From IMG/VR virus record IMGVR_UViG_3300018891_000001, positions 62,001 through 126,000 of that record: 64,000 nt of DNA, one strand, 5' to 3'. The position numbers were made by a program, and so were the translations under genes. Of the stretch, positions 2 to 33,512 are shown piece after piece. How positions within the stretch are numbered: position 1 is the first letter of the stretch; each line of letters begins with the position of its first letter. The notes under the pieces were generated by a model that searched no databases, was not told the origin of the DNA, and saw nothing but the letters and a program-made list of their open reading frames with translations.

Positions 2-3000
2 GCTAATACAATCCCTGGTGGTCTGTTGCACTTGCGGGATATCTTAAATGTAAAAACCGCCCGAGAACAAGCAAGTTTTCGTATTTTTGAAAGAGGAACC
101 ATTCAAGCTTCTTTGAATGCCCATCGAGGATTTGAAATTACTGAACCTCTAAATGAAGAAGTTATCTTTGTGAATGGTAAATTTGTAAAGCTCTTTGACT
201 ATGATGCAATTAATAATAATGCTCCCTTAGAAATCTTGAATCCAAAGCGAGACATGTTCCTAACATCTTCTCAGTTTGGTTCAATGGGAAAAATGCATCG
301 TCATATGTCAGGACTTATGACAGATAACGAATCTCCTCGGAATATTATATCTTCTTTCTTTGATATCGGACGACAAGATAAAGATAGTGTCTTTATCCAA
401 GGTGTGAGTGTCTTTACGAAGTTTTTTAAAGACGATTGGGAACGAAATAAAATGAAATCATTCATTAAATACGGGATTAATACCCCAGAGGATTTTTTTG
501 AATTGAACACATATTTCCGATTGAATACAAAAGGGTTTAGTGCACGGTTATTAAATAATTTAAGAGGACACTTGCCTCGATCTATAGAGGAATTTATTGA
601 AAGGGAAAACGTTAATTTTTCAAGACAGGAAGATATCTTAAAACTATTTAGTCATATCGGTGAGAAGGAAATCAAGCGAAAGGGTAGCCCTTATACGGAG
701 CTTGTCACATTGTATCGACAATATCGTCGCAATCCAGATGCCGTATTAAATCGAAAAACGCCTGTTGGAGAAAGTAATCCGATTTTAGGGCACCATACTC
801 ATATTCAGACTGGATATGATGTGATTCATCAGCAAACCAGCTTATATCTCTTGCAAGAAATGTTGATGGCTCGGCCGGGAAAAGGGATTTATATAGACCT
901 TGCCAATCAGTTTCGAAGAGAACTGCAAGGATTGTATTACGACGGTAAAATTTTTAAAGATGAGTTACAAAAAGCAGAAGAACTATTAAATTACAGTATG
1001 TTTCGTTCTCAAGGGTTTGATTTTTTCGAGAATCGAAATGCAGCTTTAAATCGTGTTAGTTACTTATTCCAACATAATGAAGAATTCCAGGATGCAATGA
1101 GAAAAATGGTTCGGCGCACTAACCCAATGTGGGAACGCTTCTCGGAAATTCGTCCAATTAACCAAGTGGAAGATGAATATGTAGCTATTAGTAAATCAAA
1201 TATAGGAGGCATTTTTAATCGTATTATCGGATTAAATTCAAGTCTTAAAGAGCGAGCACAAGCAGCAGGAGAATTGTTCCGTCAATGGAGTCCATTTACA
1301 GGACGACGCAATATGGAAGATGTCACTCCATTTACCCTGTTTGGTGTGTATTATCCAGTATATCGCTTACAAGATGCACTCGGTAATGCAGGATTAGGAT
1401 TTTCCGATCAATCAATGGGAAATACCTTCCAAATGTTTTCTGCTCTTATGTGGAAGCGAATTTTCCCGGTGTATGGTACCGTAGAAGGCATAAAGTATAT
1501 GGATTGGAAAATGGATCAATGGACAGGAGAAGGTCTTGATGAGCGATGGGAAAACTATAAAGCACAATATCGTTTAGAGAAAGCATTGGAGCGAACACCG
1601 GAAGAAATCTATCAACTTAAACGGGAGCGAATGCTTCGACCAGGTATTGAACATTGGGAAGCTATGCCGGATGTTCACATTCCGGGAATCGGCCCTGTTG
1701 GAGCAGGAGATTTCTTAAATTTATTGTTTGCTCCGTTGATGGGTTATGCTCCTCTTCGAGAAGAAGATATGATGACTTACGATGAAACTCTCCATGATTT
1801 GTATTACGGAACGGAAGAAATCCGAAAATCCCGTTGGTGGCTCTTTGGTTCCAAGTCAGCATATCGTGGAGATCGGATTATTGAATTTGCTCCAAATTCG
1901 TTCCGTTTAGCACATAGCGATTATGAATGGACAAATACAAATGCAACCGGAGAAGAATACTGGAGTCATCATTTATTACCGACACTCGAAAATCCATTAG
2001 GAGGATTATCTTATCTTTTCGGACTTCGTGACCCATATTGGTGGGAGCGAAAACATTACTATGATCGTCCGTATTTATTAACAGGCGAATTGTTCAACCC
2101 GAACACGATGGTGTTAGGAGATATCGGCAATGCAACAATCGGACGACTCATTAAACCAGTGCAGGAAATGCATCCGGAATATTGGAGTGATCCAATCCTT
2201 ATTTATGAAAATGAAACACAGTATTTAGGGGATCGGCCAACAGAACCGGTTCGAACTCGAATTTCTCCCGGAGGTCGAATTGAACATGATGTTCTTGCCA
2301 CTCCTGCACAGTATGGAGTAACAGAGGGGATTCAGAAAATCGAAGTCGTAGATGAGGATGGAGAAGAAATCAGAGTAATGAATCCTGAAATTCTAACAAG
2401 AGGATCAAACGCAAGATATGTGATGACTCTTGAACTGGACGATGAAGGAAAAACAACAGGAGGATATGTGGCCACTGATTTGGAAGCCAATGAAAGTATT
2501 TATGTCCCTGCTAATATTGCACAAGAATTGACACTGGAAGAAGCATTCCGATATGCCGAAACAGAAAACCCACAGGGAACTCAAGTCAAAGCGGTGACGA
2601 TTTCTACTCATAATCCAAGCTATCAAACATTAGTTAGCACTCAGCCACGAGCCATGATGGATGAAGAATTTGCCTATCATCAAGACATTTTGTATCGAAA
2701 AATGGTGAACATTCAAGATCCACGAGATGGATCATGGAGATTGAGAGAAGGTTTTGAAAACTGGACAGAACCATTAGGTGTGTATAAATGGATTTTAGGA
2801 GACGAGTTGATTGGATACGACCCATATAAAGGTCAATCGGTTATTCAGCGAGCCGATGTAGCCTACAATGCATCCAATCGTTTCTGGGAATCCGAATTAG
2901 GTTCTCTTGGTTCTCAGTTGTCTGAGATTGGTCGTCGTTTTATTCGGCGGGATAGCTCACAATTAGAGAAATATAATCCTATTCGGAACACTATGCCAGA

Positions 3001-3133
3001 CTGGTTGCCAGGAGATAACTATTTTATTAATTTCCAAGTAGGAGATCCATACTCAAAGATTCCAAATGGAGAACGACGTTTACCGGGAGAGGCATATGAA
3101 GCTTTGCATGAACTTCATCCAGATGAGACTGGT
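2..3133 (+). CDS. Exon 1 (5'-partial) of a giant virion-associated protein, possibly tape-measure-like or ejected; joined to 4340-6184 after intron removal
   Basis: The frame is open from base 2 (ANTIPGGLLHLRD...), so the track start at 26 is not the true start. It ends ...ELHPDETG at GGT 3131-3133, followed directly by group I intron structure. The tape-measure-like call rests only on size and position upstream of the hub/baseplate genes. Confidence 0.7.
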
Positions 3134-4339
3134 AAAATATTTGCCTGTCTATAAACATGGCACGAATTGCTGGAAACCCCTTAGAGCCTTGCGAGCTACA
3201 ACGGAACCGGTAACGGTAAACGTGAATGCTTGAAAATCGCAAGGATTGGGCAATCAGCAGCCAAGCATCTCTGGAAACGGAGATGAAGGTTCAGAGACTA
3301 TCGAAAGCTCCTACTATATCTCACCCTGACGAAACATGATATAATGGAGCAAGTAGAGTTATTTTACAGTGATGTAAAATAACGGCGTGCCATTAATTGC
3401 AAGGAGGATGTGTATAATGAAGTCATTGCATCAAAATAAAGAATGGTTAGAAGAACAGTATTCAAAGTATGGGACATCAACAATAGCAAAAATGGTCGGA
3501 AGAAATGATAAAACAATACAATATTGGTTGAAAAAGTTTAATATACCAATGCGAACAAGAAGTGAATCAATGAAAATAACCGAAAATCGCATTCATACTG
3601 TTGATGTCGATTATTTTAAAGAAATTGATACGGAAGAGAAAGCATACTTTTTAGGTTTTCTTATGGCTGATGCGAATTTATCAATCAGAACTGATAATAA
3701 ACATGTAGAAACAAAAAGCATAGATTTGACCATTCATAAAAGTGATGTTGAAATATTGATCAAATTAAAAAATGCAATTAAATGTAGCAATGAAATTAAA
3801 CCAAAAGGAAACAATATGAGATTAGCAATATATAATACACACTTTGCTGATAACTTGATTCATTGGGGTATTGCTGCAAATAAAACAGGGCATGAAGTTT
3901 TTCCAAATATATCCGAACATTTAAAGCACCATTTTTTAAGAGGATACTTTGATGGTGATGGATGTATTACTTGGAGTAAAAACGGGAGACTTCGAGGTAA
4001 AGTTCATTTTGTTAGCGGATATGAAATGATGAAAGGTATTAAAGATTTTATTGAGAGCAAAGGTGTACAGTATACAGATAAATCATTGCATCCTAAAAAG
4101 GGAGCAAATGCTTTTGAATTAGAAACAGCTACATTGCCAAATATAGCAAGAATATATGACATAATCTATAAAGATGCTACTGTTTTTTTAACCAGAAAGA
4201 AAAAACATTTTGATGCATTTATGGAGCAATATATTAATTCTCCTATTGCAATTAAAAGATATAGTCCGACCTTATACCGAAAGGTATAAGAGGCAAGCAG
4301 AAATGACTTGCCCCTCCTTTATTGGAGAGTAACAATGTG
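3134..4339 (+). mobile_element. Group I self-splicing intron (probably subgroup IA) with endonuclease ORF in loop L8
   Basis: P1: exon ACTGGT pairs with intron GCCTGT, with U.G at the splice site. P3 is ATGGCACG 3157-3164 / CGTGCCAT 3386-3393. Core elements: P AATTGCTGGAAA 3165-3176, Q AATCAGCAGCC 3252-3262, R TTCAGAGACTA 3290-3300, S AAGATATAGTCC 4256-4267. P7 is GACTA/TAGTC with bulged A3295. P8 is TAATTGCAA 3394-3402 / TTGCAATTA 4246-4254. P9 is CTTATACC-GAAA-GGTATAAG 4271-4290. Terminal G at 4339; P10 is exon-2 AAATA with intron TATTT. Splicing restores the frame (ETG|KYG). Confidence 0.93.
3417..4289 (+). CDS. Intron-encoded LAGLIDADG homing endonuclease with N-terminal HTH-like region
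   Basis: Two LAGLIDADG-like motifs (YFLGFLMADAN and HFLRGYFDGDG) and an N-terminal HTH-like segment (TSTIAKMVGRNDKTIQYWLKKFNIP). AAGGAGG at 3401-3407 favours ATG 3417 over the track GTG 3387. Confidence 0.88.
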   Translation: MKSLHQNKEWLEEQYSKYGTSTIAKMVGRNDKTIQYWLKKFNIPMRTRSESMKITENRIHTVDVDYFKEIDTEEKAYFLGFLMADANLSIRTDNKHVETKSIDLTIHKSDVEILIKLKNAIKCSNEIKPKGNNMRLAIYNTHFADNLIHWGIAANKTGHEVFPNISEHLKHHFLRGYFDGDGCITWSKNGRLRGKVHFVSGYEMMKGIKDFIESKGVQYTDKSLHPKKGANAFELETATLPNIARIYDIIYKDATVFLTRKKKHFDAFMEQYINSPIAIKRYSPTLYRKV

Positions 4340-6184
4340 AAATACGGAGCTTTTGATAAATTTAAAATTTTGGCAGATGTGGCTCCGTGGAGTGATGAAT
4401 ATAAATTCTGGAGTCAATATCTCCTAGATAACTTAGAAGATCCGGAATTGCGACAAGAAGCAGCCGAAATCCGCAGACAAGTCTCCATGCGGAAACAAAA
4501 ATATGATTTTCAACCATACCGATTTAAAGGACAAAATCTCGTATATGAAGAAGTAACTGTAAAAAAGTTTTTAGATGATTACACGTTTTTAACTGAAGAA
4601 TTCGGAGATCAGCCAATCCGAATTGCCGGAGTAGAATATCGCAAAAAAGCATCAGGAGTACTGCAAAATTACTTCCAAGAAGGAGACAAAGTGGTTATTG
4701 GAGTTGCCGCTGATCCAACGCAACGAATTGCTAATGACACTTACGGAACGATGCGAGCCGTTATTTTTAATGAATTAGGAAATATCAATCAAGATATTAT
4801 TCGTCGTGGTCGCATGGTCGAAAACCTGAATGATTTCTCTCCTGCGGGCGTGCATGCTCGTTTTACTCCGGAGGAAATTCGAAGAGGGGCACGATGGGAA
4901 ACAGTAGCTCATGCAAGTACACCATTGAATACCAAGTTCTTGCAAGTGCGAACCGCTTTAGAGGAATACGAACGAGATCAGATTTATGGAAAAGACTGGG
5001 CAACATGGGAAAACTTCATGCTAAGTGACTATGTTATCCCAACCTTGCAAGGATTAGGACGTTTTGATAGTCCATTGTGGTCCATGGCAGCAGGAGCCGT
5101 AACCGGACTTGTTCTTGGTCGCTTCTTTTTACGAGGAGGCCGACCAACCAAAATTGCTGCAATATTAGGAGGATTGTATGGTTTAGGCTCTAATTTCTTC
5201 TTTAAATACTATGAAAATAAGCATGGTGAAGCGTGGATTCCAGAGCGTCGAAGAATTGAACATGAAATCAATGAGTATTTCGATATCTTAAAATACCTCA
5301 AATACGAGGGACTCTATCAAAAAGCAAGAGAAGAAATTGCTCATGCCACGGGATATGATATTGAAGATTTGGCTCAATTGATTCAAAACCAAAAAGAATT
5401 AAACAAGCAACGAAAAGAGGAACTGGAGGCAGAAAAGAAACGGCTTTATATTGAGCAGCCAAAAGGATGGGAAAAGCGCAGAGAAGAGATCAATCAAGAA
5501 CTAGAAACAATTTCTTTAGATTGGGAAAATCTCTATTTGCCAGAAGCCTTCTTGCAAGCATTACAGTATCGACAAGAGCGTGATACCACATTATATGCGA
5601 TAGATCCATATGGTGATCGTTTGCAAGTCATGAGAGCTTTTCCGTACAAAGACAAATGGTTCTTTAATGCGTTTGTTGAAGCGAATCAAGAAGAACGAGA
5701 ACGTATTTTGGAACTAGTTCCTGAAAACCAACGCCGGATTTATAAGGCTATTTGGGGAATGGGGCTTGAACCTCAAAAGCCTCTAGAGTATTACATGCAA
5801 AAATACCGAATCCCTGATTGGACTTGGGAAGGCTGGCGACCGGAATATAATTTGGAAGACATTAAAGTCAAAGTAGTTCAAGAATATGGATTAGATTTGT
5901 CTGATTTCAATTTCTGGGAGGATGATGTAGAAGCCTCTCAATACGTTCCAGACTTGCATCCAGATGGAAATGAGTTTAAAGGTGAACCGGCTTCCAACTT
6001 TACTGGCTTTCAAGCATTGCGACAAAATCTGATTCATATTCTACAAGGATATGGCTTGCAAGATGTTCGTGTTACCGTATATCCATCCACTGGCTCTGAA
6101 ACCAATGTTCATTTCACCTATACTGAAGACCGAAGTGAAGAGATTGAAGAACATCTCCGCAAGTATGGAAGCCGATATGTGTAA
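4340..6184 (+). CDS. Exon 2 of the giant virion-associated protein; contains a degenerate SNase-like region and a Gly/Ala-rich hydrophobic hairpin
   Basis: In frame with exon 1 after splicing (KYGAFDKFKILADVAPWS...). SNase-like pattern at ~4547-4815; hydrophobic WSMAAGAVTGLVLGRFF...IAAILGGLYGLGSNFFF at ~5078-5205. Confidence 0.75.
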   Translation, partial: KYGAFDKFKILADVAPWSDEYKFWSQYLLDNLEDPELRQEAAEIRRQVSMRKQKYDFQPYRFKGQNLVYEEVTVKKFLDDYTFLTEEFGDQPIRIAGVEYRKKASGVLQNYFQEGDKVVIGVAADPTQRIANDTYGTMRAVIFNELGNINQDIIRRGRMVENLNDFSPAGVHARFTPEEIRRGARWETVAHASTPLNTKFLQVRTALEEYERDQIYGKDWATWENFMLSDYVIPTLQGLGRFDSPLWSMAAGAVTGLVLGRFFLRGGRPTKIAAILGGLYGLGSNFFFKYYENKHGEAWIPERRRIEHEINEYFDILKYLKYEGLYQKAREEIAHATGYDIEDLAQLIQNQKELNKQRKEELEAEKKRLYIEQPKGWEKRREEINQELETISLDWENLYLPEAFLQALQYRQERDTTLYAIDPYGDRLQVMRAFPYKDKWFFNAFVEANQEERERILELVPENQRRIYKAIWGMGLEPQKPLEYYMQKYRIPDWTWEGWRPEYNLEDIKVKVVQEYGLDLSDFNFWEDDVEASQYVPDLHPDGNEFKGEPASNFTGFQALRQNLIHILQGYGLQDVRVTVYPSTGSETNVHFTYTEDRSEEIEEHLRKYGSRYV

Positions 6185-6199
6185 AAGGGAGTGGATTAC

Positions 6200-9100
6200 A
6201 TGAATGAACCATGGAACCAAACACCAGAAGATATCCGAGTGAATATTGTATTACCTAAATCAAAAGATTTAAAAGTCGTTGCCGTTTCCGATCCGGTCTA
6301 TTATCAAGACCGGACGGATCCCGAATATGAAAAACGAATTACTCGTCATATTGATTTTCTGAATCGGCAATCGGCAATTTTAGAACGGGATAAAAACTCG
6401 TTGGCTCTTGAAATGCAAGAACTCATGCGTAAAAAAGAGACGATAATTTATGATGGACAACGAGTATATCGCTTGTTTCATTCCTTAAATCAACGACACA
6501 ATCAACAAACTTTAGAGCTATTTGAAGAGTTTTATCGTAGCCTAAAAAATAATCAAAATCATTATATTTTTGATATCGAAACATTTGGAGATGTTCATGA
6601 TCGACAAAAACCATACAGCATTTCCGAGATTTCAATTAATGAATTTGACCGACAAGGCAATTTGGTTCGCAAAGGCTATAACACCGTTTTGCGACAAGAT
6701 CAAAAAACAGTAGATTATTTGCAGCAACTTATTGATGATATTCGAAAAGACAAATATGCTTACAATCGTTTAGAAGATTGGGAAAAACGGAGTCTAGTGG
6801 ATTTAATGCGTTATGCAAGCTATATGAGTGAGTATGATGAACATGCGTTTTCTCATAACCTTAAAACTCAAGAAATCCAACATCATTCCATTATTAAATC
6901 GGTGTTTGACCACCAAGACCAAGTGCATCATGGAAAGGTATTACGTAATATTGACCAATATCTTTTGTATATGCAATCAGGACTTGATTATCTAAAAAAA
7001 CATGGTACACCAGTGCAAACAGCATTAAAACAGATCGAAAAATTATTTCAAGAGAATGCGGATCGTTTTTTCCTTACTTATAACGGGTTAGTCTTTGACT
7101 GGCCAGTGTTAAAAGCTTTTGCAGAAAAACATGGGGTCACTTTGTCATCTATTAAACATCTTGACTACTTAAATGCCATTCGAACCGTATTTTCGGACTC
7201 TGATGTATTAAAACGAAGAATCAATCCAGATTTTCAGCGGAGTGCATACAGTAAAGATAAACTAGCTGCTATGCGTCAAGCATTAAATTTAGAAACACAA
7301 GATGAAGCGCACAACGCACAAATTGATACACATGACACAGCAAAAGTGATAGCTGCTACCTATGAACATCTTCATCAAGAAATCCAAAATTCGAAATTTC
7401 CGATTCGAGAAGGATTCAACTATCATCCTACGTATTTAACATGGAATGATGAGCCTCTTCGTCACGGACAAAAACTATTTGCCATTGGAGGAGCAATGGC
7501 CGTACAAGATGGAGACGAATCTTTCCGAGTGACCTTAGATGAAAATGGAAAATGGGTGCCTGTCACTAATGATTTCAATAAAACCGTCATTAATAGTAAA
7601 ACCTTCTATGAATTTGCTGGTATGCAGAAATTAGAAGAAGGACAGCTGGCATTTCGATTTTTTGATCCAGACCGAAATGAATATGCCTATATTGTTCGTA
7701 GCGGAGAACATGCATTTCAGGAACTGCAAGACTTTGTACAAAGTCGTTTTTACAATTGGGATGGATTAGACCCTCAATATCAACGAGATATCTTGCACGC
7801 TGCTGAAGCAGACCGAGCCCGTCGTCGTTATCAGCGTTTCTTTAGTATGGATGGAGCCGGCAAAGGATTGGCAATTATAGATGGGGAAATCGTCGAAAAA
7901 GGGACAGCAGGTTTTTCTGGCTTAAAACGAATGATTGCCAATGCCGAAATCATGAAAACTCATTTAGAAAGTAAAGGAGCCCAGTATCGTGCCAAAGTAG
8001 AAGAACTCATAGCACAAGGAATGAGTCGAAATCAAGCCAAAAGAGAAGCACGAAAAATACGGGCACATCAATTGCCAAATCACCTAGATTTTGAAAGTTT
8101 ATGGGATGAAAGTCGGCAGAAATACGTTATTAATGAAGCAGAAAGAAAGCAATTCTTTAAAATGTATAAGCGTTTAATCGATGAACTTCCATATCTAAAA
8201 GAGGTAGTAGAAACCATTGATCAAGAATTTGCAGAAGAAATTCAACAAGCAGCTGCTATCAAAGATAACCGAAAACGACGCAGGGCTCTTATGGAGATTA
8301 ATCAAAAACGAGATCAAGCCCTTATGAATTACTATCGATACATGACAGATGCCGTGGGAGAACCTGAACAAGAAAGGACATTAAAAGAATTTGAAAATCG
8401 GCGTTTGGCTTTTTATGACCCGGAAGTAGACGATTATCGCACCTTGGATTTTACCACTGTCAAAAGTGCAAGAGATAGTTTATATCAATATGCTCGACGT
8501 GGCACAAAAGAAAGCCGTAATCAGCAAAAAGTGATGAAAGAGCGGTTAGATTTCCTTTTTCGTAATTTACAAACTCAGCATATCATTACTCCAGGTCAAT
8601 ACTCTTATTACTCCGATGTATTATGGAACACCGATTCGGTATGGCATGCAGCAGGAGAGATTGCTATCAATATGAGACAACGAAATAACGGAAAATATGA
8701 AACTACCTTAACAGAGCCATCCATGATTCAAAATCAAAATATTCAGCAGCTTACCAAAGAACAAAATCGACAGTTTATTCAAAGAGCTATCGAGGACACT
8801 CGTAATGCTCAATTGATTATCAATATGGACTCAGCAACAGGTAAGAAACTGATATTAGGTGAAGAAATAAGAAAAACATTAGAGATTTTGGATCAACAGC
8901 GTTTCTCACGACTAGAACCAAAAAACTATGAAGCATTAGAAGAATTGATTGCAAGTATTCGTAAAACTGATCGTACGAAACAAATTGCATTAGTAATGGA
9001 TACTCATTCTAATGATGGATTAATGAAAGCCTATGTCTATAACGGAAAAGATAGTATAACAGTTCGCAATCAATTAGCTCGAGGAACAACTCCTACACAA

Positions 9101-30884: not shown

Positions 30885-32510
30885 ATGATAGCACAACATA
30901 TTTTATTTATTAATAAGTATCAAGAGTTATGGGGGATGGGGCGAAACGCCAGTGGACAATTAGGGGATGGAACGACTACTAATAAACTTATCCCTACTCG
31001 AATTGGAACAGATACAGATTGGAAACAGGTAGCAGTAGGAGAGTTTCATACAGTTGCTATCAAAAATGATGGAAGTCTGTGGGCATGGGGGCATAACGCC
31101 AATGGACAAGTAGGGGATGGAACGACTACTAGTAGAACCACTCCTACTCGAATTGGAGCAGATACAGATTGGAAACAAGTAGCAGCAGGAAACCATCATA
31201 CAGTTGCTATTAAAAATGATGGAAGTCTGTGGGCATGGGGGTATAACGCCAATGGACAAGTAGGGGATGGAACGACTGCTAATAAAAACACCCCTACTCG
31301 AATTGGAACAGATACAGATTGGAAACAGGTAGCAGCAGGAAGCAATCATACAGTTGCTATCAAAAATAATGGAAGTCTGTGGGCATGGGGGCATAATAAC
31401 TATGGACAAGTAGGGGATGGAACGACTGCTAATAAAAACACCCCTACTCGAATTGGAGCAGATACAGATTGGAAACAAGTAGCAGCAGGAAACCATCATA
31501 CAGTTGCTATTAAAAATGATGGAAGTCTGTGGGCATGGGGGTATAACGCCCAAGGACAATTAGGGGATGGAACGATTACTAGTAGAACCACTCCTACTCG
31601 AATTGGAGCAGATACAGATTGGAAACAAGTAGAGGTAGGATACCAACATGCAGTTGCTATTAAAAATAATGGAAGTCTGTGGGCATGGGGGTATAACAAC
31701 GTTGGACAATTAGGGGATGGAACGACTGCTACTAGAACCACTCCTACTCGAATTGGAGCAGATACAGATTGGAAACAAGTGATAATAGCGGGATCTACCT
31801 CTTACGGAATCAAATTAACACTCGATTTATATGGTTGGGGGTATAACAACGTTGGACAATTAGGGGATGGAACGACTAACAATAGGCTAACTCCAATCAA
31901 AATTTCCATTACAGATCCTATCGGAGTGTCTATCCAAAAAATTTTCCCAACAAATGTTCCTACAAATTTGATTGTAGCTTGTCGTTCTCTTGATCTATAT
32001 AAGTTAATTTTAAAGGTTCAAATTCCTTCTCAAACCGGTATGAGATTTTTATTCTCAACCGATAAAACCAACTGGAAATCTTATAACTTGACTACACGTT
32101 CATGGGAAGTGGTTTCTCTTGAAAATATTCGTAATCAAGGAATGACCAAAGAACAAGTCGAGTCGTTAAATGAAATCGATCTAGCTCCATATCGCAATGT
32201 TCCATTTTATATTGCTGTATGTATGTGGACTGAAAATCAAAATGAAACTCCTGTATTTAGGGGAATCGATGGGTATATTGATGCCTATACTAATACTCCA
32301 AGTATTCAATCGATTTCTGCTGAATGTGAATTGCTAAAAAGCGAACAACCAAAACTCTATGTTTCTCGAGATGATGGAGCCACTTGGAAAGAAATCCGGC
32401 CAGATACTCTCACTCAATTAGATGACTTACCAGAAGGAACCAAATTACGTGTAAAAGCAGTTCTTTCAAATGGTCAAGAACTGCATGGACTGTCATATTC
32501 TTGGGTTTAA
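30885..32510 (+). CDS. RCC1-repeat (beta-propeller) putative receptor-binding fibre protein
   Basis: About 6.5 repeats of GQLGDGTT...[31 protein letters not shown]; C-terminal module almost identical to that of the 28019 product. Confidence 0.85.
30951..31895 (+). repeat. Tandem 150-bp coding repeat array (6 full units plus 1 partial)
   Basis: Units start at 30951, 31101, 31251, 31401, 31551, 31701 and 31851, with long identical blocks such as GATACAGATTGGAAACA and GGAAGTCTGTGGGCATGGGGG. Confidence 0.95.
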
Positions 32511-32522
32511 GAGGTGAGACAA

Positions 32523-33512
32523 ATGGATATCATTTCATACGGTATAGCATCCAAAGCCGCTAAACAAGAATCTTACACCCGAAAAGAGGTATTAGGATTG
32601 GGTGTACAAGGTACTTCGTCACATCTTAAAGGACGTATCGATCATATCGAAAAAGAGATTCAATCGGTTGTTGCACAAGCTGATAAACTTATTATCAATA
32701 ACACTATTAATATCATGAAAGCTCATGCAAAACTTAATGCCGTAGCCAAAAGTATGAAGTATAAAATGCATAATATGATGTTTGATGATTTGTTAGATTT
32801 AAGCGGTATTGACACGGCCAAAAGCTCTGGATATACACATGATGCAATCAACGGGTTATTAAAAGCTAGTAAAGCTAGTTCCTATATGATTACGACAAAA
32901 ATAGAACCAACCGATACTGTGCCTAACAAAGTGGTATTAACTGTTGAAGAAAGAAGTGAAGGAGCAAATATTGCCAATCAAGCTGTCATCACCGGAATTG
33001 GAGGAACATTTGTATCCGGTCGTTCCTTGGTAGACGGGGATAAAACCAACTATGCTTGGGATGATGGTTCCCAAACTAATCAAGGAGTAGTGTTTACCTA
33101 TGCATCTCCTAGGAAAATACAAAAAGTAGTAGTATACAGCAATAACACTTACTATTTAAGGGGAGCCGAATTATGGGTAAATGGGACAAAAATAGCTTCA
33201 ACAACTAATAACATTAGTTCAAGTAATCCGTGGATAATTGATCTGACACCTATGGATGCCACAGAAATTAAAATTATTCGACCTTCTGGGGCATATGATC
33301 AAGCCATTAGTGAAATTGAAATTTATGAATCTGTGACAGACATTAAAGGCTCTTATTTTTTGTCCCGGGATGGCGGGAATACGTTTGAACCCATTCAGCC
33401 GGAAACGCTCTTTTATTTCACGGCAAAGTCACCGGCTGATAAACAACTAGTATTAAAAGCAGAACTTCCTGCGAACGTTCAGCTATTAAACTATGGATTG
33501 ACATGGTCATAA
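32523..33512 (+). CDS. Fibre protein fusing an MDIxS-type N-terminus, a discoidin-like domain and the shared SRDGG C-terminal module
   Basis: MDIISYGIASKA start (RBS GAGGTG); MFDDLLDLSGID is shared with the adapter paralogs; SLVDGDKTNYAW...AISEIEIY is discoidin-like; FLSRDGGNTF...YGLTWS end. Confidence 0.6.
   Translation: MDIISYGIASKAAKQESYTRKEVLGLGVQGTSSHLKGRIDHIEKEIQSVVAQADKLIINNTINIMKAHAKLNAVAKSMKYKMHNMMFDDLLDLSGIDTAKSSGYTHDAINGLLKASKASSYMITTKIEPTDTVPNKVVLTVEERSEGANIANQAVITGIGGTFVSGRSLVDGDKTNYAWDDGSQTNQGVVFTYASPRKIQKVVVYSNNTYYLRGAELWVNGTKIASTTNNISSSNPWIIDLTPMDATEIKIIRPSGAYDQAISEIEIYESVTDIKGSYFLSRDGGNTFEPIQPETLFYFTAKSPADKQLVLKAELPANVQLLNYGLTWS

What the first reader, a model, noticed from the sequence alone, without database searches (positions are those of the whole stretch)
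3134..4339. Group I intron interrupting a giant virion-structure gene
Seen: all core pairings (P1, P3, P7 with the G-binding bulge, P8, P9, P10) can be drawn, and splicing fuses two track ORFs into one protein of >1650 aa (...HPDETG|KYGAFDKF...). Without splicing, exon 1 stops 18 nt into the intron. Known: phage group I introns mostly sit in nucleotide-metabolism or replication genes; cases in structural genes are fewer. Inference: production of a probably essential virion protein depends on ribozyme splicing, and HPDETGKYG may mark a conserved functional motif.
Basis: partly seen in the sequence, partly recalled or inferred. Interest (0 to 1): 0.62.

Follow-up and report, generated by a model that had tools for sequence, protein, structure and literature searches.

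The report
Mobile group I intron in phage tail gene
A self-splicing group I intron that carries its own homing-endonuclease gene interrupts a 2,008-codon tail-region virion gene of a 216-kb soil-crust phage; the call is sound, but this kind of element is already well known in phages, structural genes included.

Summary
Window 3134-4339 (1,206 nt) is a subgroup-IA-type group I intron.

- **RNA structure:** every core pairing can be written with coordinates, including the U·G pair at the 5' splice site and the terminal G at 4339. Rfam's group I model matches in two collinear halves (39.7 and 27.7 bits). They are split by an 833-nt P8 loop.
- **Relatives of the core:** it is 77-83% identical to introns in 305 public phage records. 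Sixteen of 33 predicted pairs show compensatory changes.
- **Splice junction:** eleven related phage contigs and Moorella phage MTATph1 carry the gene uninterrupted. They are collinear to the codon across ...HPDETG|KYGAFDKF...
- **Host gene:** it starts upstream of the window and encodes 1,394 + 614 = 2,008 aa. It is the homologue of Bacillus phage 0305phi8-36 gp145, which was found in virions by mass spectrometry. It lies between chaperone-like genes and a tape-measure-like gene.
- **Not shown:** splicing itself. Only DNA runs hold this phage.
- **Novelty:** low. Introns in phage capsid and tail genes, and intron-rich jumbo phages, are published. This genome has five more introns, in the large terminase, DNA polymerase and helicase genes.

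The parts
2..3133 (+). Exon 1, the part inside the window. The gene starts 1,049 nt upstream of the window at G000:C1:60952 (L008:10952). The whole exon is 1,394 codons and ends ...LHPDETG.
   Evidence: ORF lists; translation and blastp to gp145 homologues
3128..3148 (+). P1 hairpin. The last six exon bases ACUGGU plus AAA pair with the internal guide UUUGCCUGU. U3133.G3143 is the wobble pair at the 5' splice site.
   Evidence: Script check 8 of 9 paired; Rfam alignment
3134..4339 (+). Group I intron, 1,206 nt, subgroup IA type (P7.1 and P7.2 present, no P2). The terminal G is at 4339.
3157..3406 (+). 5' ribozyme core: P3, P4, P5/P5a/P5b, P6/P6a, J6/7, the P7 5' strand (3294-3300), P7.1, P7.2, the P3 3' strand and the P8 5' strand (3395-3406).
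   Evidence: blastn 77-83% identity to known phage introns
3401..3407 (+). Ribosome-binding site AAGGAGG of the intron ORF, 9 nt before ATG 3417. Its GGAG (3403-3406) lies in the P8 stem, paired with CUCC 4240-4243.
   Evidence: Sequence; pairing check
3417..4289 (+). Homing-endonuclease gene of 290 aa. It has an N-terminal helix-turn-helix-like region and two LAGLIDADG motifs (FLGFLMADA and LRGYFDGDG). Its last ~16 codons overlap the P8 3' strand, J8/7, the P7 3' strand and P9.
   Evidence: Pfam PF14528 (29 bits, cut-off 22.5) and PF00961 (24 bits, cut-off 23.1); phrog_4645 1.8e-43; translation
4240..4339 (+). 3' ribozyme core: the P8 3' strand (4240-4253), J8/7 plus the P7 3' strand (AAGAUAUAGUCC, with UAGUC at 4262-4266), P9 (4271-4290, GAAA loop), P9.1 (4292-4312), P9.2 (4314-4327) and the terminal G 4339.
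4340..4344 (+). P10: the first five exon-2 bases AAAUA pair with UAUUU 3138-3142 of the internal guide.
   Evidence: 5/5
4340..6184 (+). Exon 2: 614 codons plus the stop, beginning KYGAFDKFKILADVAP...

Best explanation
Window 3134-4339 is a mobile group I intron of subgroup IA type, inserted between the Gly and Lys codons of a conserved block (LHPDETG|KYGAFDKF) of a 2,008-codon tail-module virion gene. The gene is the homologue of Bacillus phage 0305phi8-36 gp145, and the phage is a 215,870-bp genome from a biocrust metagenome. The expected mechanism, inferred from the intact anatomy and the general chemistry of group I introns, runs as follows. The pre-mRNA folds so that the exon end ACUGGU pairs with the internal guide (P1, with a U.G pair at the cleavage site). 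An external guanosine bound in P7 attacks after U3133. P10 then aligns exon 2, the terminal G4339 takes the guanosine site, and the exons are ligated. The result is one reading frame for a 2,008-aa protein. The 833-nt P8 loop encodes a two-motif LAGLIDADG endonuclease. It presumably cuts intron-less alleles of this gene in co-infecting relatives, so that repair copies the intron in (homing). Its ribosome-binding site lies within the P8 stem, so ribozyme folding and endonuclease translation probably compete. Shown here: sequence, structure, covariation, collinearity with intron-less homologues, and the endonuclease family. Inferred: splicing, homing and the need for the protein.
For: Rfam RF00028 matches in two collinear halves, E 2.8e-8 and 1.2e-4; in the genome-wide search these are 9.5e-10 and 4e-6. 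All pairings were verified. Model-free folds give z = -6.7 and -4.3. The core is 77-83% identical to introns in 305 phage records, for example the split lysin gene of Staphylococcus phage PT1-4. Sixteen of 33 consensus pairs carry compensatory double changes across 8 related introns. Eleven IMG/VR relatives (53-74% amino-acid identity in exon 2) and Moorella phage MTATph1 CDS0026 read straight through the predicted junction with no gap, and KLEB27-3 gp033 also spans it. The Gly codon immediately before the junction is invariant, which fixes the splice sites to the base. The endonuclease passes both Pfam LAGLIDADG cut-offs and keeps both acidic motif residues. The same genome holds five more group I introns and three paralogous endonucleases.
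Against: There is no RNA evidence. The only runs holding this DNA are four DNA metagenome runs of one study, kept as contigs. Neither Rfam half reaches the 50-bit gathering score. P1 has one U-U mismatch. A GTG at 4337 lies 7 nt after GGAGAG, so exon 2 could in principle be translated on its own from unspliced RNA.
Confidence: 0.92

Rival explanations
1. The ribozyme is decayed or inactive and the gene is truly split. Exon 1 (plus 6 extra codons) and exon 2 (started at GTG 4337 or TTG 4322) are made as two proteins that assemble without being joined.
For: An SD-like GGAGAG (4324-4329) lies 7 nt before the in-frame GTG 4337. Gene callers annotated the homologous KLEB27-3 gene as separate 'structural protein' genes. 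No RNA data are available.
Against: Every catalytic element is intact: the U.G pair, the P7 guanosine site, J8/7 AAGAUAUAGUC and the terminal G. The GGAG is paired in P9.2. All 12 intron-less homologues encode one chain across a highly conserved block. The KLEB27-3 'split' is itself an unannotated group I intron.
Confidence: 0.05
2. It is a free-standing homing-endonuclease gene lying between two genuinely separate genes, or an intein or other protein-level insertion, and not an RNA intron.
For: Free-standing endonuclease genes between phage genes are common. 0305phi8-36 has an in-frame 236-aa insertion at the same spot.
Against: The exon frame hits a stop 18 nt into the insert, so there is no in-frame read-through and an intein is impossible. 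Ribozyme halves flank the ORF. The flanks are two halves of a single conserved protein. The 0305phi8-36 insert has no intein termini and no Pfam match.
Confidence: 0.01
3. The intron splices, but its endonuclease is no longer a homing enzyme. It could be inactive, a maturase that helps folding, or a weapon against co-infecting relatives as reported for PhiPA3 gp210.
For: The ORF overlaps the ribozyme core, and four diverged paralogues (28-39% identity) persist in one genome. A competition role for an intron endonuclease has been published (PMC11620839, listed).
Against: Both LAGLIDADG motifs keep their acidic residues and the ORF is full length. Nothing here distinguishes these roles.
Confidence: 0.25

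Closest known systems
Phage subgroup IA group I introns with endonuclease ORFs (T4 td/nrdB/nrdD, SPO1 DNA polymerase intron, Staphylococcus phage K/Twort-type lysin and polymerase introns)
   Same: Same core with P7.1/P7.2, the J8/7 sequence AAGAUAUAGUC, a U.G 5' splice site, a terminal G, and an endonuclease ORF looped out of a peripheral stem. The P3-P7 core is 82.6% identical to the intron that splits the lysin gene of Staphylococcus phage PT1-4.
   Different: The host gene is a giant tail-module protein. The ORF is a LAGLIDADG type in P8, whereas the T4 and Staphylococcus examples carry GIY-YIG or HNH enzymes (their ORF types and positions are from my own knowledge, not tested here). There is no P2.
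Cluster J mycobacteriophage capsid and tail gene introns (PMC3706429)
   Same: Group I-like introns in virion structural genes, with U at the exon-1 end and G at the intron end. One carries a LAGLIDADG ORF. They were recognised the same way, by collinearity with uninterrupted homologues.
   Different: Those were confirmed by RT-PCR and protein sequencing; this one is not. The phage lineage and host gene are unrelated.
'Tube' gene intron of prophage BwK1 and B. cereus B4264, relatives of 0305phi8-36 (PMC2504315)
   Same: A group I intron in a tail structural gene of the same broad phage lineage. It is present in some members and absent in others, and sits in the most conserved part of the gene.
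   Different: A different gene (tube versus the gp145 homologue).
0305phi8-36 introns: recA (I-Bth0305I, PMC3239194) and the DNA polymerase III gene with ORF036 'mobile intron protein'
   Same: ORF036 is a homologue of the endonuclease found here (28.6% identity, E 8e-15). The phage lineage is related.
   Different: Those host genes are replication and recombination genes. 0305phi8-36 gp145 itself has no intron.
Intron-rich jumbo phages (Jug phages, 18.5 group I introns per genome, PMC12880540)
   Same: A large phage genome with many essential genes split by group I introns and endonucleases, here at least six introns. About half of the Jug phage introns tested were confirmed by metatranscriptome reads.
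   Different: Gut Bacteroides phages with mostly short ORF-less introns. This is a soil-crust phage related to phages of Bacillus and Moorella, and four of its introns have LAGLIDADG genes in or beside them.

Membership tests
Group I catalytic intron (Rfam RF00028) | Covariance-model match at or above the curated gathering score (50 bits) | tested here: inconclusive
   Two collinear partial matches of 39.7 and 27.7 bits (E 2.8e-8 and 1.2e-4) together cover the model, split by the 833-nt ORF loop. Neither half alone reaches 50 bits. The ORF-deleted ribozyme could not be scored with the tools available.
Group I catalytic intron (Rfam RF00028) | Conserved core helices P3-P8, with the P7 guanosine site and the J8/7 sequence | tested here: met
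   P3 8/8, P4 6/6, P6 3/3, P7 5/5 (I read a bulged A and an extra G-C pair beside it), P8 12 bp, and J8/7 AAGAUAUAGUC. Compensatory changes occur in P5, P5a, P5b, P6 and P6a.
Group I catalytic intron (Rfam RF00028) | P1 with a U.G wobble at the 5' splice site, a terminal G at the 3' end, and P10 | tested here: met
   U3133.G3143, G4339, and P10 5/5.
Group I catalytic intron (Rfam RF00028) | Removal restores a continuous gene that is collinear with uninterrupted homologues | tested here: met
   Eleven IMG/VR loci and MTATph1 are contiguous across the exact junction. The test was made exon by exon; the joined protein was not built.
Group I catalytic intron (Rfam RF00028) | Guanosine-dependent self-splicing of the RNA | not testable with these tools
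   No RNA run holds the sequence.
Subgroup IA (IA2-like) | Extra helices P7.1 and P7.2 between P7 and the 3' strand of P3 | tested here: met
   P7.1 3307-3311/3346-3350 and P7.2 3358-3367/3374-3383 (10/10) were found by hand and by minimum-energy folding. Subgroup-specific models were not available, so the IA2 label is provisional.
LAGLIDADG homing endonuclease | Two LAGLIDADG motifs with a conserved acidic residue, and a match to the family profiles | tested here: met
   PF14528 29 bits (cut-off 22.5) and PF00961 24 bits (cut-off 23.1); motifs FLGFLMADA and LRGYFDGDG; phrog_4645 1.8e-43.
LAGLIDADG homing endonuclease | Site-specific cleavage of the intron-less allele | not testable with these tools
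   Needs a bench assay.
0305phi8-36 gp145-like virion protein | Sequence homology along the protein, and the same position upstream of the tape-measure-like gene | tested here: met
   Exon 2 versus gp145 gives E 5e-112, and exon 1 gives E 2e-33 and 4e-23. gp145 is annotated as a virion protein by mass spectrometry and precedes gp146, the 'hypothetical tape measure protein'. Here the gene follows a tail sheath gene and chaperone-like genes and precedes 2,304-aa and 2,147-aa ORFs.

The most novel reading that the evidence does not exclude
The roughly 45-codon conserved block of this gp145-family tail gene (MPDWLPG...HPDETG|xYGAFDKF) may be a recurrent landing pad where related group I introns have moved between sites. 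Bacillus phage KLEB27-3 carries a different, unannotated group I intron with an HNH-family ORF in P6, 43 codons upstream in the same gene. Its 5' exon flank is AGACUGGAU, against AGACUGGU here. The present gene contains AGACTGGT at both positions (2998-3005 and 3126-3133). That pattern would fit guide-sequence-directed ectopic insertion by reverse splicing, rather than two independent endonuclease-driven invasions.
Probability: 0.1. Interest if true: 0.5.

Novelty: new member of a known kind. Interest (0 to 1): 0.27.

Why it matters
For annotation, three called ORFs in this phage should be read as one 2,008-aa tail-module protein plus one intron endonuclease. The same correction applies to gp031, gp032 and gp033 of Bacillus phage KLEB27-3. 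For biology, it adds one more case where production of a large virion protein must wait on RNA splicing. It also adds a LAGLIDADG-bearing intron to the mostly HNH and GIY-YIG phage repertoire, in a genome with at least six introns. It opens no new question, because intron-split structural genes and intron-rich jumbo phages are already documented.

Tried and rejected
- **Rfam at gathering threshold, whole window:** blank. The reason is the ORF-split hit, not the absence of an intron.
- **Megablast of 2600-4900 against GenBank phages:** no match. The phage has no close sequenced relative there.
- **Host protein domains:** Pfam, PHROGs and NCBIfam on both exons gave nothing significant. A profile of 11 homologues against PDB sequences gave nothing credible; the best hit, E 0.03, was an antibody fragment.
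- **Structure of the junction region:** AlphaFold2 on a 600-aa stretch of an intron-less homologue centred on the junction gave mean pLDDT 49.5, with the junction region below 50. The structural role of HPDETG/KYG therefore could not be assessed. Only a downstream SNase-like OB fold came out (the Atlas lead scored 0.84, below its trust level).
- **RNA evidence:** none. Four DNA contig runs of one biocrust study hold the sequence. One contig is identical and is probably the source. No intron-less joint was seen.
- **Intein idea for the 236-aa insert in 0305phi8-36 gp145:** rejected. It has no Cys/Ser start, no His-Asn end and no Pfam hit.
- **Rfam over 38 kb of three homologous loci at E 0.01:** blank. 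A narrower scan then found the 3' core of the KLEB27-3 intron at 19.6 bits.
- **Literature search for gp145 of 0305phi8-36:** nothing found.
- All protein work was done exon by exon by reference, or on naturally uninterrupted homologues. The large protein searches were not used, because the cheaper searches answered the question.

Full report
**1. What is at the coordinates**

The window is G000:C1:62001-126000 of a 215,870-bp virus record with direct terminal repeats. The record is 37% G+C. The DNA occurs in four biocrust metagenome runs of one study.

The + strand frame that enters the window runs to a TAA at 3152-3154. A 300-codon ORF follows at 3387-4289, and a 620-codon ORF at 4322-6184. 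The upstream gene starts outside the window at L008:10952.

Exon 2 is 614 codons beginning KYGAFDKF... at A4340. The spliced product would therefore be 2,008 aa, not just '>1650'.

**2. Is it a group I intron?**

The default Rfam scan of the window found nothing. A scan of 3000-4500 found RF00028 twice on the + strand: 3124-3458 (39.7 bits, E 2.8e-8) and 4177-4289 (27.7 bits, E 1.2e-4). The first hit covers P1 through the 3' strand of P3. The second covers the 3' strand of P8, J8/7 (AAGAUAUAGUCC) and P9. The two halves are separated by the ORF, which explains why neither reaches the 50-bit cut-off.

I wrote out each helix and checked it by script:

| Helix | Coordinates | Result |
|---|---|---|
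| P1 | 3128-3136 / 3140-3148 | 8 of 9 paired, U3133.G3143 wobble at the cleavage site |
| P10 | 3138-3142 / 4340-4344 | 5/5 |
| P3 | 3157-3164 / 3386-3393 | 8/8 |
| P4 | 3168-3173 / 3254-3259 | 6/6 |
| P6 | 3260-3262 / 3288-3290 | 3/3 |
| P6a | 3266-3273 / 3278-3285 | 8/8, GAAA loop |
| P7 | 3296-3300 / 4262-4266 | 5/5; I read G3294-C4267 as a sixth pair with A3295 bulged |
| P7.1 | 3307-3311 / 3346-3350 | 5/5 |
| P7.2 | 3358-3367 / 3374-3383 | 10/10 |
| P8 | 3395-3406 / 4240-4253 | 12 bp, 2-nt bulge |
| P9 | 4271-4278 / 4283-4290 | 8/8, GAAA loop |
| P9.1 | 4292-4297 / 4307-4312 | 6/6 |
| P9.2 | 4314-4317 / 4324-4327 | 4/4 |

The terminal G is G4339. P7.1 and P7.2 between P7 and the 3' strand of P3 mark subgroup IA. 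There is no P2.

Minimum-energy folding with no model recovers P3-P6, P7.1 and P7.2 (z = -6.7) and P9-P9.2 (z = -4.3). No shuffle out of 200 folded as well.

The P3-P7 core has blastn matches in 305 phage records. The best-listed ones are 77-83% identical, led by Staphylococcus phage PT1-4 at 82.6%. In PT1-4 the match lies between two halves of a lysin gene, next to an HNH endonuclease gene.

I aligned eight related cores: this one, three others from the same genome, PT1-4, S. epidermidis phage BE28, Vibrio phage ICP1 and Bacillus phage KLEB27-3. In that alignment 16 of 33 consensus pairs keep pairing through changes on both sides. P4 is invariant.

**3. Are the splice sites right?**

I did not build, search or fold the joined protein.

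tblastn of the last 300 aa of exon 1 and the first 300 aa of exon 2 hit the same genes in GenBank phages.

- **Moorella phage MTATph1, CDS0026 (1,949 aa).** Exon 1 ends at residue 1349 and exon 2 residue 2 aligns at 1351, so there is no gap.
- **IMG/VR relatives.** A scan with exon 2 returned 12 loci. One is the same phage from another sample, with the intron. The other 11 (53-74% identity) have the end of exon 1 directly followed by the start of exon 2.
- **Junction sequence.** Their junctions read LHPDETG|xYGAFDKFKILADVA with small variations. The Gly before the junction and the YG after it are invariant.

Moving both splice sites by a codon or less would lose that Gly, so the sites are fixed to the base.

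**4. The intron ORF**

ATG 3417 is preceded by AAGGAGG (3401-3407). The 290-aa product passes the Pfam cut-offs for LAGLIDADG_3 and LAGLIDADG_1 and matches phrog_4645 at 1.8e-43. It has two motifs with the acidic residue kept (FLGFLMADA and LRGYFDGDG), plus an N-terminal helix-turn-helix-like part.

Homologues at 25-33% identity are annotated 'mobile intron protein' or 'endonuclease' in other phages. They include ORF036 inside the DNA polymerase III gene of 0305phi8-36.

The ORF sits in the P8 loop, and its last ~16 codons run through the 3' strands of P8 and P7 and into P9. Its GGAG is one strand of P8, so folding of the ribozyme should hide the ribosome-binding site. This last point is an inference.

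**5. The host gene**

No Pfam, PHROG or NCBIfam family matches either exon. Homology is to 0305phi8-36 gp145, annotated 'identified as virion protein by mass spectrometry'. That gene lies after two 'tail chaperonin' genes and before the 'hypothetical tape measure protein' gp146.

The order here is:

1. tail sheath (phrog_16991);
2. two paralogous small genes;
3. chaperone-like genes;
4. this gene;
5. a 2,304-aa ORF;
6. a 2,147-aa protein with a peptidase/lysin part.

'Giant virion-structure gene' is therefore supported by homology and position. Its role and its essentiality are inferred.

A fold of an intron-less homologue was poor around the junction (pLDDT below 50). Residues 64-168 after the junction resemble the staphylococcal-nuclease OB fold (Z 8-9). 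This agrees with a weak Atlas lead. Glycine-rich helices follow.

0305phi8-36 lacks the HPD motif and has a 236-aa non-intein insertion exactly at this position. This argues that the site is an insertion-tolerant surface element rather than a catalytic centre.

**6. What is not shown**

Splicing itself is not shown. No RNA run holds the sequence. The contigs laid on it show only the source phage, plus short 90-95% matches at 3244-3314 from other contigs of the same community that diverge on both sides of that stretch. No intron-less joint was seen.

An in-frame GTG at 4337 behind GGAGAG could start exon 2 independently. The intact core makes a truly split gene unlikely (about 5%).

**7. Comparison and novelty**

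Group I introns in phage structural genes are published:

- capsid and tail genes of Cluster J mycobacteriophages, confirmed by RT-PCR (PMC3706429);
- a tail 'tube' gene in prophages related to 0305phi8-36 (PMC2504315);
- Jug phages, which average 18.5 group I introns per genome (PMC12880540).

The present genome has five more RF00028 matches: in the large terminase gene, twice in the DNA polymerase gene, and in or beside two helicase genes. It also has three paralogous LAGLIDADG genes.

The finding is a sound new member of a known kind. It is useful for annotation but unsurprising to a specialist.

**8. Side result**

In Bacillus phage KLEB27-3 the homologous gene is annotated as gp031, gp032 and gp033. 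The intervening L011:4813-5873 has these features:

- a P1 with a U.G pair (ACUGGAU/GUCCAGU);
- a P4-P5 region 75% identical to the one here;
- an ORF matching PHROG families annotated as HNH endonuclease (phrog_374, 4.3e-66), placed in P6;
- J8/7-P7-P9 (RF00028, 19.6 bits);
- a terminal G.

Its removal gives ...MPDW-M-PGVEYF..., collinear with ...MPDWLPGDNYF... here. It is thus a second, different intron 43 codons upstream in the same conserved block.

Noticed in passing
L011:4813-5873 (Bacillus phage KLEB27-3, OM634661.1, about 31818-32878): An unannotated group I intron splits the homologous gene, currently annotated as gp031 'structural protein', gp032 'hypothetical' and gp033 'structural protein'. 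gp032 matches PHROG families annotated as HNH endonuclease (phrog_374, 4.3e-66). The insertion site is 43 codons upstream of the site in the window.
   Followed up: partly
window 2998-3005 and 3126-3133: The octamer AGACTGGT occurs twice, 128 nt apart. One copy is at the 5' flank of this intron and the other is at the position where KLEB27-3 has its intron (flank AGACTGGAT). This may be coincidence, or a trace of guide-sequence-directed movement between the two sites.
   Followed up: no
G000:C1:30259-30543(+), 144689-144985(+), 145674-145941(+), 173787-174082(-), 183708-183959(-); all outside the window: Five more RF00028 matches in the same genome, four of them above the gathering score. They lie in the large terminase gene, twice in the DNA polymerase gene, and in or next to two helicase genes. 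Three of them have a phrog_4645 LAGLIDADG paralogue (28-39% identity) beside the ribozyme, not inside the Rfam hit.
   Followed up: partly
L009:5290-5997 (0305phi8-36 gp145 residues 1055-1290): An in-frame 236-aa insertion sits exactly where the intron lies in the window's gene. It has no intein termini and no Pfam match, and the HPD motif is absent in that phage.
   Followed up: partly
window about 4530-4845 (exon 2 residues about 64-168): A staphylococcal-nuclease / Tudor-SN-like OB fold is predicted in an intron-less homologue (Z 8-9), followed further on by glycine-zipper-like helices. The function is unknown, and the usual nuclease motifs look degenerate by eye.
   Followed up: partly
window 4322-4339: GGAGAG followed by an in-frame GTG (4337) or TTG (4322) inside the intron's 3' end gives gene callers a false start for exon 2. 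The GGAG is one strand of P9.2.
   Followed up: yes
L025 (Staphylococcus phage vB_SepS_BE28) 1501-1639; L026 (Vibrio phage ICP1) 1501-1641: Closely related ribozyme cores lie in tail-gene regions of public phage genomes, beside HNH endonuclease genes. In BE28 the match lies upstream of a 'tail associated cell-wall hydrolase'. In ICP1 it lies between a putative tape measure gene and ORF79. In ICP1 nothing is annotated at the match.
   Followed up: no
L008:7179-7946 and 8019-8534 (just upstream of the window): Two adjacent paralogous ORFs between the sheath and chaperone-like genes match phrog_9206, which is labelled 'major head protein'. By position they look more like tail tube proteins, so the label may be wrong.
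   Followed up: no
window 3244-3314: Other contigs in the four biocrust runs match only this P6-P7 stretch at 90-95% and diverge on both sides. This suggests that further group I introns of the same family are present in that community.
   Followed up: no
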